A stretch of DNA of 64,000 bases from Anaeramoeba ignava BMAN (Eukaryota; Protista; Anaeramoebae), in the NCBI GenBank assembly GCA_028826165.1, contig JAPDFW010000011.1, forward strand, positions 372,001 through 436,000. The letters are read 5' to 3'. Below, one piece after another: positions 22,709 through 30,278 of this stretch. Each line of letters begins with the position of its first letter. Within the stretch, counting starts at the first letter, position 1. The notes under the pieces were generated by a model. It had not been told where the DNA came from. It did no database searches and worked only from the letters and a program-made list of their open reading frames with translations. The translations under genes were made by a program, and so were the position numbers.

Positions 22709-24580
22709 ATGAATGAAATTTTATTTTTTGGTGAAAATGAAAAACCAAAACTTATCAAAAATGAACCAGATATAATAACAAAATCAATTCAATTTCAATT
22801 TGAAAATGAAAATGAAAATGAAAATGAAAAACAAATTAAACAAATTTCATCAGGTGGCTCTTCAACAATTTTCCTTTTTAAAGATGGAAAAGCAATAGAA
22901 TATTCAAATCAAAATCCTCAAAAATCCAAATTGAAGAAAATATTCAAAAAGTGGTTGCTGGTGCTTGGAATGAAGCTATTTTAACATCAAAAGGAAATGT
23001 ATTTGCCAAAGGAGAAAATATTAATTCAAAAAACCCAAAAGAATTTATCAATATTTCATCATTAATTGAAGATCCAAATGATAGAATAATTGAAGATATT
23101 GTTTCTGGAGCTTATTCAATTTACTTATTAACTTCAAATCAAAATGTTTATGGAATTGGTTCAAATCGAAGATATCAGTTGTGTTATGATCTGGGCACAT
23201 ACACAGAAACAGAAAAACCAATTTTAATGATAAAAAATGTTTCTAAAATATTTTCAGGAATTATTTCAAGTTCGGTTTTTCTTTTAAGTCCAAATCAAGA
23301 GTTATTTGGATGTGGAAATAATCAATTTGGTCAACTTGGATTAGGCCGTACAAGAAAAGATATAATCCCAAGATTACTTCAACTACAAAATATTCCAAAA
23401 GGCAAAATAATTGATATTCAATCCGGACTTACTCATTCAATAATGATGATTGAAAATGAAAATCAAAATCCAAAAAGAAAACTTTATTCATGTGGACTTT
23501 ATAGATATAATGGACTTGGCAGAAATGAGAATGCTTATGAATTTACTGAAATCAAATCATCTTTATTTGAAAATGATGATAATATTCTTGATTTTTCTGT
23601 TGGAAATGAGCATACTTTGATTTTAACAACAAAAGGGAAATTGATAAGTTTTGGAAGAAATGATTATGGTCAATTAGGAACTGGAGATACAAAACATCAA
23701 TCAATTCCAATCCAAATTGAACTTCCTAAATTAAGATTTAATGAAGATATTTCTAATTATCATATTTCTTGTGGATTTAATAATTCATTTCTTTATTATT
23801 CTCCTATTTCTTTTTTTTCTAATCTTGAAGAAGATTTGATAAAATTATTTGAAAGAAAAGAATTTTGCAATGTTTCATTTAAAACCAAAAATGAAAGAAA
23901 TAATTGAAGCTCATAAATTAATATTGAAATATAGATTAAATCAAAATCAAAATGAAATTGAAAAACTTCAAGAAATTATTTCAAAAAAATCAATTAAAGA
24001 ATCAAATCAAATATTTGAAATGATTTATTCAAATAATTCCAATATAAATCCAAAATTATATTCTGAAATTAAAGAAATTATAAATTCAAATGAAAAAATT
24101 GAAGAAACAATGAAAAGAATTTATTTAAATGAAAATGAAAATGAAAATGAAAAAGATTTTATTATTGAAAGAAAAGAAAAACAATATAAATTTCCTAAAT
24201 TAATATTAATAATGAGAAGTGAATTATATCGAGGAATGTTTTTATCTGTAACTGAAGATACTTCAAATAAAGTTACAGATTATAGTGAATTAAGTAATAA
24301 ATCATTTCAAATATTTGAATATTGGATTTATTCAAATCAAATTAAAAATGGAATTGAAATTACACAAGAAATAATTAATGAACTTAAAATTGGAATTGAT
24401 TATTTTCAATTAAATCGAACATATCCAAATTTATTTGATTTATTAATTAATGAATTTAATAATCAAAATGAAATGAAAAAAGAACAAAAGAAAAGAACAA
24501 AAGAATTTTTACATCAATTAATTCAAACAAATCCAAAATTATTTGATTTATTAATTAAGAAATTTAATAATCAAAATTAA
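22709..24580 (+). CDS. RCC1-repeat + BTB/POZ-like protein, copy 6; frameshifted here
   Basis: Three overlapping ORF pieces colinear with the paralogues, with frame changes near 22925 and 23895. Confidence 0.75.
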
Positions 24581-24985
24581 ATTTAAAATTAAAATTAAAT
24601 TCAAAATTAAAATTAAAATTAAAATTAAAATTAAAATTAAAATTAAAATTAAAATTTAAATCAAAATTAAATTTAAAAATTAAAATTAAAATTAAAATTA
24701 AAATTAAATTTAAAATTAAAATTCAAAATTTAAATTAAAATTAAAATTAAAATTAAAATTAAAATTAAATTCAAAATTAAAATTAAAATTAAAATTCAAA
24801 ATTAAAATTAAAATTAAAATCAAAATTAAAATTTAAATCAAAATTAAAATTAAAATTAAAATTTAAATTAAAATTTAAATTAAATTCAAAATCAAAATTA
24901 AATTCAAAATAAAATTAATTTTTAAATTAAAATAAAATTTAAATTCAAAATTAAATTTAAAATCAAAATCGAAATTAAAATTAAA
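24581..24985. repeat. (AAAATT)n intergenic satellite
   Basis: Directly visible; the same unit separates the RCC1-BTB copies. Confidence 0.9.
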
Positions 24986-25059
24986 AAAAAAAGCAAAAAA
25001 AAAAAACATTTTTTCATTTTTTTCATTTTTTCATTTTTCATTTTTTCATTTTTTCAAAA

Positions 25060-27594
25060 ATGGAAAGCCCAATCGTTTTAACAAATTCATCATCTATGAT
25101 TAAAGCAGGATTTGGAGGAGATGATGCACCAAGAGCAGTTTTTCCAGGAATAGTAGGAAGATCCAAATATCCGGAAGTGATGGTTGGAATGGGATTTCGG
25201 GATTATTACATTGGAGACGAAGCAGATTCAAAGCGGGGAATACTTGACCTAAAATATCCAGTAACAAGAGGAAGAATAACAAACTGGGATGATATGGAGA
25301 AAATTTGGCATCATTTATTTTATAACGAACTAAGAATTGCTCCTGAAGAACATTATTTGCTAGTTCAAGATTCTTTTTTAGGTCCAAAATCTGATCGAGA
25401 AAAAATTACTCAGGTTTTGTTTGAAACTTTCAACGTAAAAGGTCTTTATATGCTTTCTGGTATCGAATCCGCTTTGTATTCAACAATGCCTTCTGGTTTT
25501 TCTTTATTTGTTCATATTGGTCATGGTTCAACTCAAATTTTACCAATGGATTTTGATAAACCGTTAATTGATTATGGAATTCGTCAAGATTTTGCCGGAC
25601 AAGATTTGGATGATTTTCTTCGATATAATATCGTTCGCGAAAATGATATTTTTTTCCATTCCAATTCAGAATCAAGAATCATTCAAAAAATAAAAGAAAA
25701 TCTATGTTATGTTACTTATGATTTCGAGGAGGAATTGATCAAGAATACCAAATCAATTATCAAACAATATGAACTTCCTGATGCGAAAGTTATAAATTTA
25801 ACGCGCACAAGATTTGCTGTTCCAGAAATACTTTTTTCGCCTTCAATGTTTGGATTTTCTCAAGTTGGACTTCTTCCATTAATTGAACAATGTGTGAGTA
25901 AATTCCCCAAATCGACCCAAGATGAGCTTTTGAAACATATCGTTGTTATTGGTGGTTCAACTATGTTTCCTGGTTTTGTTGATCGTTTTAAGAAAGATTT
26001 ATCAAAAAGTTCTCCAAATGCTAATGTTTTTGCTGATGATTTTAGAAAATATTCAATTTGGATTGGTGGTTCTGTTATTTCTAGTCTTACTTCTTTTTCT
26101 GAAAAAGTTATCCAGAGTTCTCAGTATGATGATCAAGGTCCTGAAGTTATTCATCAACATACAAAAGGAGCATTTTTGGAATCTGAAAGGTTATTTACTG
26201 GAGTTGAATTTTTGGATCGGATTTCACCTTCTTTTGTACAAATTCATTTAAAATTCATTTATAAAATTCATTTATAAAATTAAAATTCATTTAAAATTCA
26301 TTTATAAAATTAAAATTCATTTAAAATTCATTTATAAAATTAAAATTAAAATTCAATTATAAAATTAAAATTAAAATTCATTTATAAAATTAAAATTCAT
26401 TTATAAAATTAAAATTAAAATTCATTTATAAAATTAAAATTCATTTATAAAATTAAAATATTCAAGTTTCAATCACAAGAAAATATTTGCATTATCGACC
26501 AAGGAACTGATAGTTTCAAAATTGGATTTTCTTATGACCAAGAACCAAAAGCAATAATTCCATCAATTGTTGGATTTGAACCATTTGGATCTGACAAAAA
26601 ACAATACATTGGAGAAGAAGCAATAGAAAATCGTGAACTTCAATTAAATCCAATATTCAAAGAAGGAAAAGTAGAAAATTGGGAATATTTGACAGCTATG
26701 TATGATTACTGCTTTAAATCACTTGGAACTTATCCCGATAGTACATCGCTTCTTCTCACAAGACCGCTCAACTCTTCTAATCCAGACACTGAGAAAATGG
26801 CACAAATATTGATGGAACAAATGAAATTGCCAAATCTTGCCTTTGCATTCCAACCGCATCTTGCTTCTTATGCTCTCGACCAAATTCAAACAGGAATTGT
26901 TGTTGATATTGGAAACGAATTTACTCAAATTCTTCCGTTTTATCAAAGATCTTATCCCTTACTTTCACACAAAATGCCGAGCATGCATTACGGAGGAAAA
27001 CATCTTACAGAGCAATTAATTCGTTTGTTCAGACACAGAAATTATGTCTTTTTGACATCTGCAGAATTTGAACTGGCAAAATATATTAAGGAAACTTATT
27101 GTTATATTGCAAGAGATTTCGATCAAGAATATGCCAACTTCCAAACTAGTACAAAAGAACAACGACACATCAAACTCAACGGAGAATCCATTTTGCTTGA
27201 TAACGAATCATTTTCTTCACTTGAACCGTTATTTAATCCAAATTTGATTGGATTATCTTATCCAGGAATACATCAAGCAATTTACGACACAATTATGCTA
27301 TTTGATCAAGAAAAGCAAAGGGAATTGTCTAAGAATATCATTCTTTGTGGTGGTTCAAGTTTGATTCCTAACTTGGTTGAACGTTTGCAAACTGAACTTT
27401 CTAGTTTACTTCCTGTTAATTTTAATCTCAATGTTTTTCGCGCTCCTGATTCTGATGTTAGAACCCTTGTTTGGAGAGGTGGCGCTGCTTTCTCAAAGTC
27501 TGAAAGGTTTTCTAGAGCAATGTTCTCTTCTAGTGATTATTTTGAAATTGGAAGTTCAGTTATTTATGAAAAAAGTTTTGAAGAATATTTTTAA
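25060..27594 (+). CDS. Tandem double actin-fold protein, about 767 aa; exons 25060-26235 and 26467-27594
   Basis: Domain 1 has KAGFGGDDAPRAVFP, ITNWDDMEKIWHH and WIGGSV. A phase-0 intron (GT 26236, AG 26466) leads to domain 2, which has IIDQGTDSFKIG, VVDIG, ILCGGSS and VWRGG. Domain 2 has no upstream ATG of its own. Confidence 0.8.
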
Positions 27595-27744
27595 ATTTAA
27601 ATTTTTAAAAAGAAAAAAAAAGTGGAACAAATTAAGATTATTTTGAAATTGGAAGTTCAGTTATTTATGAAAAAAGTTTTGAAGAATATTTTTAAATTTA
27701 ATTTTTAAAAAGAAAAAAAAAGTGGAACAAATTAAGATTATTTT
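27535..27744. repeat. ~101-bp direct tandem duplication spanning the stop codon and 3' UTR of the actin gene
   Basis: TTTGAAATTGGAAGTTCAG...GTGGAACAAATTAAGATTA occurs at 27541 and again at 27642. Confidence 0.9.
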
Positions 27745-27846
27745 TTTTCCTTTATTCATTATTTAATTTGAAAAAGAACACGAAAGAAATAAATTCAAAA
27801 AAATTTTATTTTCATTTTTTTCATTTTTTTCATTTTTTTTAATAAA

Positions 27847-30278
27847 ATGATTTCTTCTTATTTAATAAAAAAACCTCATTCTTTTCAAAATTATTTTTTA
27901 AAATCATTTTCTAATAGACTTTCTAAAGAATCATCATTATATCTCCAAAAACATGCAAATGATCCAGTTGATTGGTTTCCTTTTGGAAAAGAAGCAATTG
28001 AAAAATCAAAGAAATTAAATTTACCAATTTTCATTTCAATAGGATTTAATTCAGTAAAAAATAAATAATCCAAATTGAAAAAAAAAAATTTTTAATCCAA
28101 AAAAAAAATAAATAAAAAAATAAATAAAAAGTGTCATTTCTGTCATAAAATGCACAACGAAAGCTTTCAAAATAAAGCAATAGCATCAATACTGAATAAA
28201 CATTTTATTAACATCAAAGTTGATAGAGAAGAAAGACCAGATCTTGATTCAATTTATATTCATTTTGTTTCTATGTTTACTGGAAATGCTGGTTGGCCTT
28301 TATCTGTATTCACTCTTCCTAATTTAACACCATTTTTTGGCGCATCATATTTTCCTCCCTTGCAATTCCAAAATCTTTTGAGTCAAATATCAGAGAAATG
28401 GAAGGATTTATCGACTCAAAAAATGTTGGAGAAAAATTCTCAACAACTTCAAACTGAATTGAAAAGAGTTTTCATTAATAATTCGGATAAACAAAAATCA
28501 AATGATCAAACATCAAAAATCCAAATTGACAAAAAAAGAGCATACCAAATTCTCAACAAAACCATTGAGCAATTTCTGTCTATTTTTGATGAAGATAATG
28601 GAGGTTTTTCTACTCCAAAATTTCTTTTACCTAGTGTTTTAGATTTTTTAATTGGATCACAAATTATGAATCCACTTTCTCATTTGGATTCAAAGGCAAT
28701 CGAAATGGCAATTACAACTTTGGATAAAGCCTGTGAAAGAGGAATATATGATCATGTTGGAGATGGATTTTTCCGTTATTCAACTGATGAATTTTGGATT
28801 CTTCCACATTTTGAAAAAATGCTTGTAAATATTTATTCATTTATTTTTTTAGTTTTACTTCCAAATCCAATTTTTCAACTCATTCCTTAATTTTAGTGTG
28901 ATCAAGGTTTACTAGTCAAAACATATCTTGATGCTTACAAAATTACTCAAAAAATCAAATTTAAAGAAGTTGCAAGAAAAACCATTTCTTTTGTTTTCAA
29001 TTATCTTTATAACAAAGAAAAGAAAATGTTTTATAGTTCAATCGATGCTGATTCTTTCCCTTCAGAAAAGGGTTCAAATTCAACAGTGAAACAAGAAGGA
29101 GCTTATTATTTGTGGAAAAAACAAGAAATTGAGGAAATTTTAGGGAAAGGAAAAAGATATGCAAGAATTATGTGAATTTTTCACAATCAAAGAAAATGGA
29201 AATATTCCACGTGATTTGAACTCAAATTCCAATTTCGTTTCCAAAAACATTTTTTACATCAACAAAGAAAAGGAGCATCCAATCAATTCTGGTTTTCATC
29301 CAGAAATGATCAGCAAATCATTGAAGAAACTTGAAAATTTCCGAATCAAAAATCGAAAAATACCTGAAATCAATTCTAATATTATCTGCTCTTGGAATTG
29401 CTCAATGATATCTGCATTGGCTCAAGCATCATCTCTTTTGCACAGTTTTGATGATTCAAAAAATATATCTGAGAAAGAATCAACTAATGAATTGGCAATT
29501 TATGCTCAAAAAACACTTGAATCTGTTATTGATAATTTTGTTGATTTATCCACTTTTGAAGTTTCACATTTTCTCGGTAAAAAAAAGGGATTTTTAACTG
29601 ATTATGCAGAGTTGGTTCGAGCTCTACTTGATGTTTATGAATATTGCAATCAAGATTTCAAATATGTTGAATTAGCAAATAATATTTTTGCGAAATATAA
29701 CGAACTTTTTTGGGATTCAGAACAAAATAATTACTGGAATTTTGCCAAAGGAGAAGAAGTTATTATGCAAACCAGCAATATATTTGATGGTGGAGAAGCA
29801 AATCCTTTAACAATTTCTATTGATAATATGATCCGTTTATCATATTTGTTGAACAATAACGATTATCTCAAAAAAGCAAAACTTTTTTTTGAATTTTCCA
29901 AAAGATTCCAAGAAAATCCTTCAATTGCTTCTTCTTTACTCAAACCTTTTCGAGAACTTTATTTTTCTTCTCCAACTCAAATTACAATCTTAAGCAATCC
30001 AAAATCTGAAAAAGCGAAAAAGTTGATCAATTTAATTAATTCAAAATATCTTCCTCAAAAATCAATTATTTGTTTGAATTCAAATGATTCTGTTAATTTT
30101 TTTTCAAAGATATCATTCCTATTTAACAAAAGAAACAATTCCATTTTCAAATTTTGACGAATCTAATAAGAAAGTATATTATATGGTTTGTCAAAATGAA
30201 ACATGTTATGGTTTTAAAGAATTTGATGAGTCAACTAAAATGATTGATATTTTTCCAACAAATAAAAACAACAAATAA
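27847..30278 (+). CDS. SPATA20: SPATA20/YyaL-like protein (thioredoxin-like DUF255 domain + alpha/alpha toroid)
   Basis: [21 protein letters not shown]; intron 28054-28131 creates S|[12 protein letters not shown]. Also [15 protein letters not shown] and PHFEKML|CDQ (intron 28825-28896). Apparent frameshifts near 29155 and 30100. Confidence 0.9.

What the first reader, a model, noticed from the sequence alone, without database searches (positions are those of the whole stretch)
25060..27594. Two complete actin folds fused in one polypeptide
Seen: two actin-like ORFs lie in the same frame, separated by a repeat-filled segment bounded by phase-0 GT (26236) and AG (26466). The phosphate-1 loop of the second fold (IIDQGTDSFKIG) lies upstream of its first ATG (26698), so it needs splicing. 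Domain 1 keeps actin-like stretches but its nucleotide loops are altered (TNSSS for DNGSG, HIGHG for DSGDG). Established: actins and Arps are normally single-fold proteins. Inference: a covalent pseudo-dimer that could act as a nucleator, cap or scaffold.
Basis: partly seen in the sequence, partly recalled or inferred. Interest (0 to 1): 0.8.

Follow-up and report, generated by a model that had tools for sequence, protein, structure and literature searches.

The report
Two-exon gene encoding a double actin
This gene of the anaerobic amoeba Anaeramoeba ignava most likely splices two different, complete actin-like domains into one 767-residue protein. It is one of five such "di-actin" genes in the genome. 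I found no paper describing a natural actin-actin fusion, and its expression and function are untested.

Summary
Window 25060-26235 and 26467-27591 each encode a full-length actin fold (Pfam Actin, E 2e-83 and 4.7e-65). A 231-nt AT-rich tandem repeat (6.9% GC) separates them, bounded by GT and AG. The second fold has no ATG before its phosphate-1 loop.

The genome is Anaeramoeba ignava. I found no paper describing it.

Four paralogous loci have the same fold-1/fold-2 order. Their annotated phase-0 introns are 69-93 nt and sit at the same two positions: right after the fold-1 tail, and nine codons before the IDQG loop. The junction codon is always GTA, which makes up only 13% of Val codons here. 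Fold-1s and fold-2s each form a clade, so the unit duplicated as a whole. Ordinary tandem actins are annotated separately (10 of 10).

A. flamelloides has three more double-actin models whose second folds also lack a start codon.

Fold 1 has lost D11, Q137, D154 and H161. Fold 2 keeps D11, Q137 and D154 but has a shortened D-loop.

An earlier first-reader note (s1-695287) raised the same idea on another piece of this genome. The nucleator, cap or scaffold function is inference.

The parts
25007..25056 (+). Promoter-like run of CATTTTTT units immediately upstream of the start codon
   Evidence: Tandem repeat. The heptamer TTCATTT lies in sense orientation within 120 nt upstream of the ATG in 46 of 70 long ORFs of this genome, peaking at -20 to -50.
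25060..26235 (+). Exon 1: start codon, actin fold 1 (degenerate nucleotide site) and its C-terminal tail; 392 codons
   Evidence: Pfam Actin 2e-83. Maps to residues 1-392 of public protein P0122. D11T, D154H, Q137 and H161 lost.
26167..26235 (+). Linker-coding part of exon 1: 23-residue tail beyond the actin C-terminus, ending ...SPSF
   Evidence: The tail is homologous to the tails of the paralogous fold-1s. Residues 369-396 of the AlphaFold2 model have pLDDT below 50.
26236..26466 (+). Phase-0 intron of 231 nt (GTACAA...TTCAAG), filled by an AT-rich tandem repeat at 26240-26459
   Evidence: 6.9% GC. Same donor and acceptor positions as the introns of 69-93 nt in four paralogues. Annotated as an intron in KAJ5080316.1.
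26275..26277 (+). In-frame TAA inside the intron; ends a 405-aa fold-1-only product if the intron is retained
   Evidence: read-through gives 13 more codons, then a stop.
26467..27594 (+). Exon 2: nine linker codons, actin fold 2 (IIDQG phosphate-1 loop, shortened D-loop), stop at 27592-27594
   Evidence: Pfam Actin 4.7e-65. Maps to residues 393-767 of P0122. Keeps D11, Q137, D154.
26698..26700 (+). First in-frame ATG of the second fold; lines up with actin Met82, so it is too far in to start a complete fold
   Evidence: (sequence, read by eye against the actin WDDMEKIW stretch).
27535..27744 (+). 101-bp tandem duplication (2.1 copies, 99% matches) covering the last 20 codons, the stop and the 3' flank; the first copy keeps the ORF intact

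Best explanation
Window 25060-27594 is one two-exon gene of Anaeramoeba ignava (public model KAJ5080316.1). Its mRNA joins exon 1 to exon 2 by removing a 231-nt phase-0 intron. Exon 1 holds actin fold 1 plus a 23-residue tail. Exon 2 holds nine linker residues plus actin fold 2. The product is a 767-residue tandem 'di-actin'.

The gene belongs to a family of five such loci in this genome. The arrangement is most simply explained by two neighbouring actin paralogues whose spacer became an intron; that origin is inferred. Three paralogous lineages still carry a relic ATG one codon after the acceptor. The window copy has lost it, so its second fold can only be made as part of the fusion.

Inferred mechanism: fold 1 has lost the phosphate-binding and catalytic residues and acts as a non-hydrolysing partner. 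Fold 2 can probably still bind nucleotide but has a shortened D-loop. A flexible linker of about 30 residues ties them into an obligatory heterodimer. Such a dimer would act at filament ends or as a non-polymerising module (seed, cap or scaffold) rather than as ordinary filament subunits. Retaining the intron would give a 405-aa fold-1-only product, which is a possible switch.

Shown: the anatomy, the conserved splice positions, the family and the public model. Inferred: actual splicing, the origin from separate genes, and all of the function.
For: - The public protein equals the model exactly.
- Four paralogous loci are annotated as fusions of 760-782 aa (with a near-identical second copy on C64). 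The donor falls right after the PS[QHF][SF] codon and the acceptor exactly nine codons before IDQG in all five loci.
- The junction codon is GTA in all four lineages, although GTA is only 12.8% of Val codons. AG at -5/-4 of an ATG occurs in 4 of 69 other genes. The ATG contexts of the paralogous fold-2s are atypical (TTA, GAA, TCG, against AAA in 41 of 73 genes).
- The annotation does not merge tandem actins in general. 10 of 10 ordinary tandem actins are on record as single proteins, and 0 of 8 single-ORF forms of the pairs are.
- Fold-1s form a clade (SH-aLRT 96) and fold-2s form a clade (93). The window copy is sister to the rest in both.
- All seven fold-1s in two species carry a tail of 20-31 residues. 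Six of the seven fold-2s end within 1-4 residues of actin's C-terminus; Afl P0123 continues into a longer C-terminal extension.
- Three A. flamelloides double-actin models have a single intron between the folds and no ATG before the second phosphate-1 loop.
- Fold 2 here is an intact 375-codon ORF in a 21% GC genome, yet has no usable start.
- Intron length and GC fit the species: mode 76 nt, mean given as about 300, longest 4168, 8.1% GC (PMC11550330 supplement).
Against:
- I could not establish whether the public model rests on RNA-seq.
- The donor GTACAA departs from the GTAAAA, GTAAAT and GTAATA donors seen in the six other introns I could check.
- The intron is three times the modal length. 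It is a minisatellite like those in intergenic DNA, and it carries 11 sense copies of the promoter-associated heptamer TTCATTT, so an internal promoter is conceivable.
- Three paralogous lineages keep an ATG one codon after the acceptor while the neighbouring residues vary. This hints that a stand-alone fold 2 may also be made there.
- The annotation is not curated. It also holds a chance read-through ORF, P0126.
- AlphaFold2 gives no defined packing of the two folds (pTM 0.50).
Confidence: 0.75

Rival explanations
1. These are two separate genes. Fold 1 is a 405-aa protein ending at the TAA at 26277. Fold 2 is transcribed from a promoter in the repeat and starts at a non-AUG codon or at Met 26698. 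On this reading the public fused model is a gene-finder artefact.
For: - The spacer is a satellite like the intergenic ones and holds 11 copies of the promoter-associated TTCATTT.
- The paralogous fold-2s each have their own ATG, and the fold-1s have stops 2-4 codons after the putative donor.
- The databases hold many double-actin models of 740-800 aa from animals, plants and fungi; I take most of these to be merged tandem genes, which I did not check.
- The annotation holds an obvious read-through artefact, P0126.
Against: - There is no ATG in any frame from 26278 to about 26534. A start at 26698 would delete the phosphate-1 loop and subdomain 2.
- Splice positions and the rare GTA codon are conserved across four lineages.
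- Ordinary tandem actins 100-145 nt apart are not merged by the same annotation, 10 of 10.
- The paralogous spacers lack the TTCATTT motif.
Confidence: 0.13
2. Fold 1 is a functional stand-alone gene. Fold 2 is a dying copy that lost its start codon when the repeat expanded.
For: - The start codon kept by the paralogues is missing here.
- Fold 2 has the longest end branch of the A. ignava set, 1.23.
- D157N and G158E in its phosphate-2 loop.
- There is repeat instability on both sides of it.
Against: - 375 codons stay open in a 21% GC genome, with a full-length Pfam match at E 4.7e-65.
- D11, K18, Q137, D154, E214 and the GG at 301-302 are kept.
- Its path length from the fold-2 ancestor (1.23) is close to that of its intact paralogues (about 0.9-1.0).
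- Three A. flamelloides second folds also lack a start, so a missing ATG is normal for this architecture.
Confidence: 0.07
3. Both products are made. Splicing gives the di-actin, while intron retention or an internal promoter gives single-fold proteins, so the intron acts as a switch.
For: - Intron retention ends fold 1 cleanly after 2-13 extra codons in all five loci.
- The ATG is conserved one codon after the acceptor in three lineages.
- Promoter-like heptamers lie in the window's intron.
Against: - There is no RNA evidence either way.
- In the window copy, fold 2 cannot be started on its own.
- This is an elaboration of the best explanation, not an alternative to the fusion.
Confidence: 0.3

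Closest known systems
Paralogous A. ignava di-actin models KAJ... (P0002 782 aa, P0003 761 aa, P0004 760 aa) and the A. flamelloides models P0123, P0129, P0130
   Same: Fold 1 with a tail, one phase-0 intron, then fold 2. The A. ignava ones share the derived motifs LN.GS and VHIG in fold 1, and IDQG, TQILP and a short D-loop in fold 2.
   Different: The window copy is the most divergent: 37-40% and 34-35% identity. It has a 231-nt repeat-filled intron instead of 69-93 nt, a GTACAA donor and no relic ATG. Orthology with the A. flamelloides genes is unresolved.
Conventional actin
   Same: Both folds match the whole Pfam Actin profile, and their best matches among solved structures are conventional actins. 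Fold 1 keeps a full-length D-loop and a plug-like loop.
   Different: Two folds sit in one chain. Fold 1 lacks D11, Q137, D154 and H161. Fold 2 has H161Q and a D-loop shorter by about 6-8 residues. Identity to the organism's own actin is 45% and 33%.
Arp2-Arp3 pair of the Arp2/3 complex (established knowledge)
   Same: Two different actin-fold proteins are held together so that they can mimic a filament end. This is the working analogy for a seed or a pointed-end cap.
   Different: Arp2 and Arp3 are separate polypeptides held by five other subunits. Neither fold here is closest to an Arp: all 60 listed matches among solved structures are actins. This is an analogy of mechanism only, and it is untested.
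Nuclear actin-fold heterodimers: Arp4-actin and Arp7-Arp9 on HSA helices (established knowledge)
   Same: Obligate, non-polymerising heterodimers of two different actin folds, one of which often has a degenerate nucleotide site.
   Different: Those are non-covalent and bound to a remodeller helix. No nuclear signal or partner was examined here.
Mammalian 100-kDa hexokinases (established knowledge)
   Same: Tandem duplication and fusion of an actin-superfamily (ASKHA) fold. In hexokinase I the N-terminal half has lost catalysis and become regulatory.
   Different: A different family of the superfamily, with a continuous fusion of ancient origin. Here the two halves are joined across an intron.
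Covalent actin oligomers made by bacterial ACD toxins (established knowledge)
   Same: Covalently linked actin units bind tandem actin-binding proteins such as formins with high avidity. This shows that a covalent dimer can act on regulators rather than as a filament subunit.
   Different: Those are made after translation by a toxin acting on normal actin. Here the link is genetically encoded and joins two divergent folds.

Membership tests
Actin family (Pfam PF00022) | Full-length match to the actin profile above the curated cut-off | tested here: met
   Fold 1: 280.7 bits, positions 5-409 of 410. Fold 2: 220.2 bits, positions 5-408 of 410. Cut-off 27 bits.
Conventional (filament-forming, ATP-hydrolysing) actin | Phosphate-binding and catalytic residues D11, Q137, D154, H161 | tested here: not met
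   Fold 1: T, lost, H, Q. Fold 2: D, Q and D are kept but H161 is Q, and D157N/G158E.
Conventional (filament-forming, ATP-hydrolysing) actin | Full-length D-loop for longitudinal filament contacts | tested here: inconclusive
   Fold 1 has a full-length D-loop. Fold 2 is about 6-8 residues shorter there. Polymerisation itself cannot be tested with these tools.
Conventional (filament-forming, ATP-hydrolysing) actin | Single fold of about 375 residues ending at the actin C-terminus | tested here: not met
   Fold 1 has a 23-residue tail that runs into a splice donor. The public model has 767 residues.
Arp1-Arp10 | Closer to an Arp class than to actin | tested here: not met
   All 60 listed matches among solved structures for each fold are actins. 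Best E 1e-107 and 1e-60. No Arp-inclusive tree was built.
Anaeramoeba di-actin family (defined here) | Fold 1 with a tail ending PS[QHF][SF], followed by a phase-0 GTA donor | tested here: met
   ...SPSF followed by GTACAA at 26236.
Anaeramoeba di-actin family (defined here) | Acceptor AG exactly nine codons before the IDQG phosphate-1 loop of fold 2 | tested here: met
   AG at 26465-66. Exon 2 begins with nine residues, then IDQG, as in all four paralogues.
Anaeramoeba di-actin family (defined here) | Each fold groups with the same fold of the other loci | tested here: met
   Fold-1 clade SH-aLRT 96, fold-2 clade 93. Quick tree only, with long branches.
Anaeramoeba di-actin family (defined here) | Junction present in mRNA or protein | not testable with these tools

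The most novel reading that the evidence does not exclude
Anaeramoeba makes genetically encoded covalent actin heterodimers: a nucleotide-dead fold tied by a flexible linker to a nucleotide-binding fold that lacks the D-loop. These would serve as ready-made filament seeds or pointed-end caps, or as avid decoys for tandem actin-binding regulators. They would have arisen when the spacer between two neighbouring actin genes turned into an intron. Intron retention would then switch between single-fold and double-fold products.
Probability: 0.25. Interest if true: 0.8.

Novelty: new variant of a known kind. Interest (0 to 1): 0.6.

Why it matters
To my knowledge, actin and its relatives work as single folds that associate non-covalently. 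In the paper library I searched I found no description of a natural polypeptide with two complete actin folds.

Public databases hold many double-actin models, and I suspect most are merged tandem genes. Here the case is different. Splice positions are conserved over deep paralogy, second folds lack a start codon in two species, and every fold 1 has a linker tail. Together these argue that the architecture is real and old within Anaeramoeba, an organism with more than 100 actin genes.

If the protein is made, it is a natural experiment in what a fixed actin heterodimer does, whether nucleation, capping or regulator capture. It may also be a clear example of a gene fusion created by turning an intergenic spacer into an intron. 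Both points can be tested directly with existing RNA-seq data and with recombinant protein.

Tried and rejected
- **RNA evidence.** No place was reported as human-like.
- **Complex prediction.** Submitted with fold 1 and fold 2 as two chains. It was counted but not folded, by a rule of the tool, so there is no verdict.
- **Word search with fold 2.** This returned nothing. The reason turned out to be the length window: the public protein has 767 aa.
- **'Open frames' of 808-890 aa.** These suggested continuous double actins. On inspection they are separate tandem genes with stops. C90 is a single actin with a long low-complexity tail.
- **Harvesting introns by GC contrast and open frames.** My script yielded only three unambiguous cases, so no donor statistics are claimed.
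- **Second ORF of the A. flamelloides transcript that carries P0272.** I looked for it to show both folds on one RNA. It was not found. P0272 itself differs from the genome model by an apparent frameshift in an A-run.
- **How the public gene models were predicted.** Not found in the paper or its supplements.
- **Literature on natural tandem actin fusions.** Nothing relevant.
- **Joining the exons.** They were searched separately by reference. The only joined sequence used was the public protein P0122 returned by a search, which went into the AlphaFold2 run and the mapping.

Full report
**What is in the sequence**

Window 25060-26277 is a 405-codon ORF. A second open frame in the same phase runs to 27594. 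Each matches the Pfam Actin profile almost end to end: positions 5-409 and 5-408 of 410, E 2e-83 and 4.7e-65. The best matches of both among solved structures are conventional actins, not Arps.

Between them lies an AT-rich tandem repeat at 26240-26459. The segment 26236-26466 has 6.9% GC, against 33% in the flanking coding parts. GT at 26236 and AG at 26465-66 are there, both phase 0.

No ATG occurs in any frame from 26278 to about 26534. The first in-frame ATG (26698) lines up with actin's Met82. A protein started there would lack the phosphate-1 loop and subdomain 2.

**Organism and public record**

The window is G000:C2:372001-436000 of a 42.8-Mb genome with 21% GC and more than 100 actin-family genes. 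An exact look-up of one of its conventional actins returns 'actin [Anaeramoeba ignava]' KAJ5076689.1.

The exhaustive protein search with exon 2 gives as best hit a 767-aa protein, P0122 = KAJ5080316.1, 'actin-7-related [Anaeramoeba ignava]'. It maps to 25060-26235 plus 26467-27591. So the fused model is already public. I found no paper that describes it.

An earlier first-reader note of this scan (s1-695287) raised the same idea on another piece of this genome, without follow-up.

**A family of five loci**

Searching the genome with each fold shows four more places where a fold-1-like gene is directly followed by a fold-2-like gene: C64 (two near-identical copies), C75 and C104. Their public models are also fusions: P0004 760 aa, P0003 761 aa, P0002 782 aa.

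Mapping these onto the DNA gives introns of 69, 73, 77 and 93 nt.

- In all five loci the donor lies directly after the codon that ends the fold-1 tail (PS[QHF][SF]).
- In all five the acceptor lies exactly nine codons before the IDQG phosphate-1 loop of fold 2.
- The two folds are in different genomic frames in two loci, so the shared frame in the window means nothing.

**Is the conserved GT more than a valine codon?**

Read through, the junction codon is Val. But it is GTA in all four lineages, while GTA is only 12.8% of Val codons in this genome's long ORFs. It is followed by A or C, giving GTAAAA, GTAATA and GTACAA.

The AG two bases before the codon that precedes the paralogues' ATG occurs in only 4 of 69 other genes. 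The ATG contexts there (TTA, GAA, TCG) are unlike the usual AAA, seen in 41 of 73 genes.

An intron I could verify by profile continuity in the neighbouring DUF255 gene runs 28054-28131. It is 78 nt, GTAAAA...AAAAG, with Pfam positions 47 and 49 on either side. It looks just like the paralogues' introns. The species' introns have a modal length of 76 nt and 8.1% GC (PMC11550330 supplement).

**Control on the annotation**

None of eight single-ORF versions of the paired genes is in the protein collection. All ten ordinary tandem-array actins that I tried are on record as separate proteins, although they lie 100-145 nt apart on one strand. So the merging is specific to these pairs.

The annotation is not curated, however. 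P0126 is a chance read-through of a gene fragment into the next actin. I could not find how the models were made.

**Phylogeny and residues**

In a quick maximum-likelihood tree the A. ignava fold-1s form a clade (SH-aLRT 96) and the fold-2s form a clade (93). The window copy is sister to the other three in both. The two-fold unit therefore duplicated as a unit, and the window copy is the oldest branch: 37-40% and 34-35% identity to the others.

- Fold 1 has lost D11, Q137, D154 and H161 but keeps a full D-loop.
- Fold 2 keeps D11, K18, Q137, D154, E214 and the GG at 301-302. It has H161Q, D157N and G158E, and a D-loop shorter by about 6-8 residues.
- All seven fold-1s examined, including three from A. 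flamelloides, carry a tail of 20-31 residues beyond the actin C-terminus.
- Six of the seven fold-2s end within 1-4 residues of it; Afl P0123 continues into a longer C-terminal extension.

**A. flamelloides**

Three double-actin models (895, 793 and 819 aa) each have a single intron between the folds, of 3226, 2224 and 5428 nt. None of the second folds has an ATG between the nearest upstream stop and its phosphate-1 loop. Together with the window copy that makes four second folds that cannot start on their own. Their orthology to the A. ignava family is not resolved, because of long branches.

**Structure**

AlphaFold2 was run on the public protein P0122 with a ten-sequence alignment. It folds both halves with pLDDT mostly 80-90 and leaves residues 369-396 below 50. 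pTM is 0.50, meaning two good domains with no defined mutual orientation. The complex test was not run by the tool.

**What speaks against**

- I have no RNA or protein evidence.
- The window's donor GTACAA is off the pattern of the six other introns I could inspect.
- The intron is three times the modal length and is a minisatellite like the intergenic ones.
- It holds 11 sense copies of TTCATTT. That heptamer lies within 120 nt upstream of the ATG in 46 of 70 genes, with strand specificity and a peak at -20 to -50. An internal promoter cannot be excluded. The paralogous introns lack the motif.
- Three lineages keep an ATG one codon after the acceptor while the neighbouring residues vary. This may be a relic of the former separate gene, or a sign that fold 2 is also made alone there.

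**Conclusion**

The most likely reading (about 0.75) is a real two-exon gene for a tandem di-actin, a member of an Anaeramoeba family that probably arose when the spacer between two neighbouring actin paralogues became an intron. The function is inferred only: a covalent heterodimer of a nucleotide-dead fold and a D-loop-less fold, acting as a seed, a cap or a non-polymerising scaffold. Intron retention may act as a switch to a 405-aa single-fold product.

They were searched one by one by reference, and the only joined sequence used is the public protein returned by the search.

Noticed in passing
window 27535-27744: A 101-bp unit is present 2.1 times at 99% identity. It duplicates the last 20 codons, the stop codon and the 3' flank of the di-actin gene. 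The ORF is unaffected because the first copy carries the stop.
   Followed up: partly
window 24560-24986: About 70 copies of the hexamer AAAATT fill the space between the last RCC1-BTB gene and the di-actin promoter. The region 24581-25059 has 4.8% GC.
   Followed up: no
window 25007-25056, 27809-27839 and 70 gene starts in the fetched loci: TTTCATTTT-type motifs (core TTCATTT) lie in sense orientation upstream of the ATG in 46 of 70 long ORFs, peaking at -20 to -50. Antisense copies occur in only 7 of 70. This resembles the TCA-containing initiator of Trichomonas, a relative of Anaeramoeba (from memory, not tested).
   Followed up: partly
window 27847-28824 and onward: A DUF255/Thioredox_DsbH (SPATA20-like) gene with a CHFCH motif. 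It has two short introns at 28054-28131 (78 nt) and 28825-28896 (72 nt). The first is verified by Pfam profile continuity; the second was read by eye.
   Followed up: partly
L039 (G000:C104:933800-939500), fold 1 of P0002: The fold 1 of the C104 di-actin carries an in-frame internal duplication of about 28 residues at the D-loop. It repeats the YIG...E..K...L.LN.P stretch.
   Followed up: no
L036 (G000:C64:745500-750000): Public protein P0126 (619 aa, 'actin-10-related') is one continuous ORF. It starts inside a truncated actin fragment and reads through the intergenic DNA into the next complete actin. It is probably an annotation artefact or a pseudogene remnant, not a second kind of double actin.
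   Followed up: partly
L016 (G000:C104:592653-596771): Two tandem actins begin MGINHSK..., with a leader of about 30 residues before the actin fold. This matches the myristoylation-type leaders noted earlier by the scan (s1-704253).
   Followed up: no
P0272 versus P0123 (A. flamelloides): A transcriptome-derived ORF of 375 aa equals fold 1 of the 895-aa genome model up to an A-run, then diverges as if by a 1-nt frameshift and stops. This may be a strain difference, a sequencing error or a real single-fold form.
   Followed up: partly
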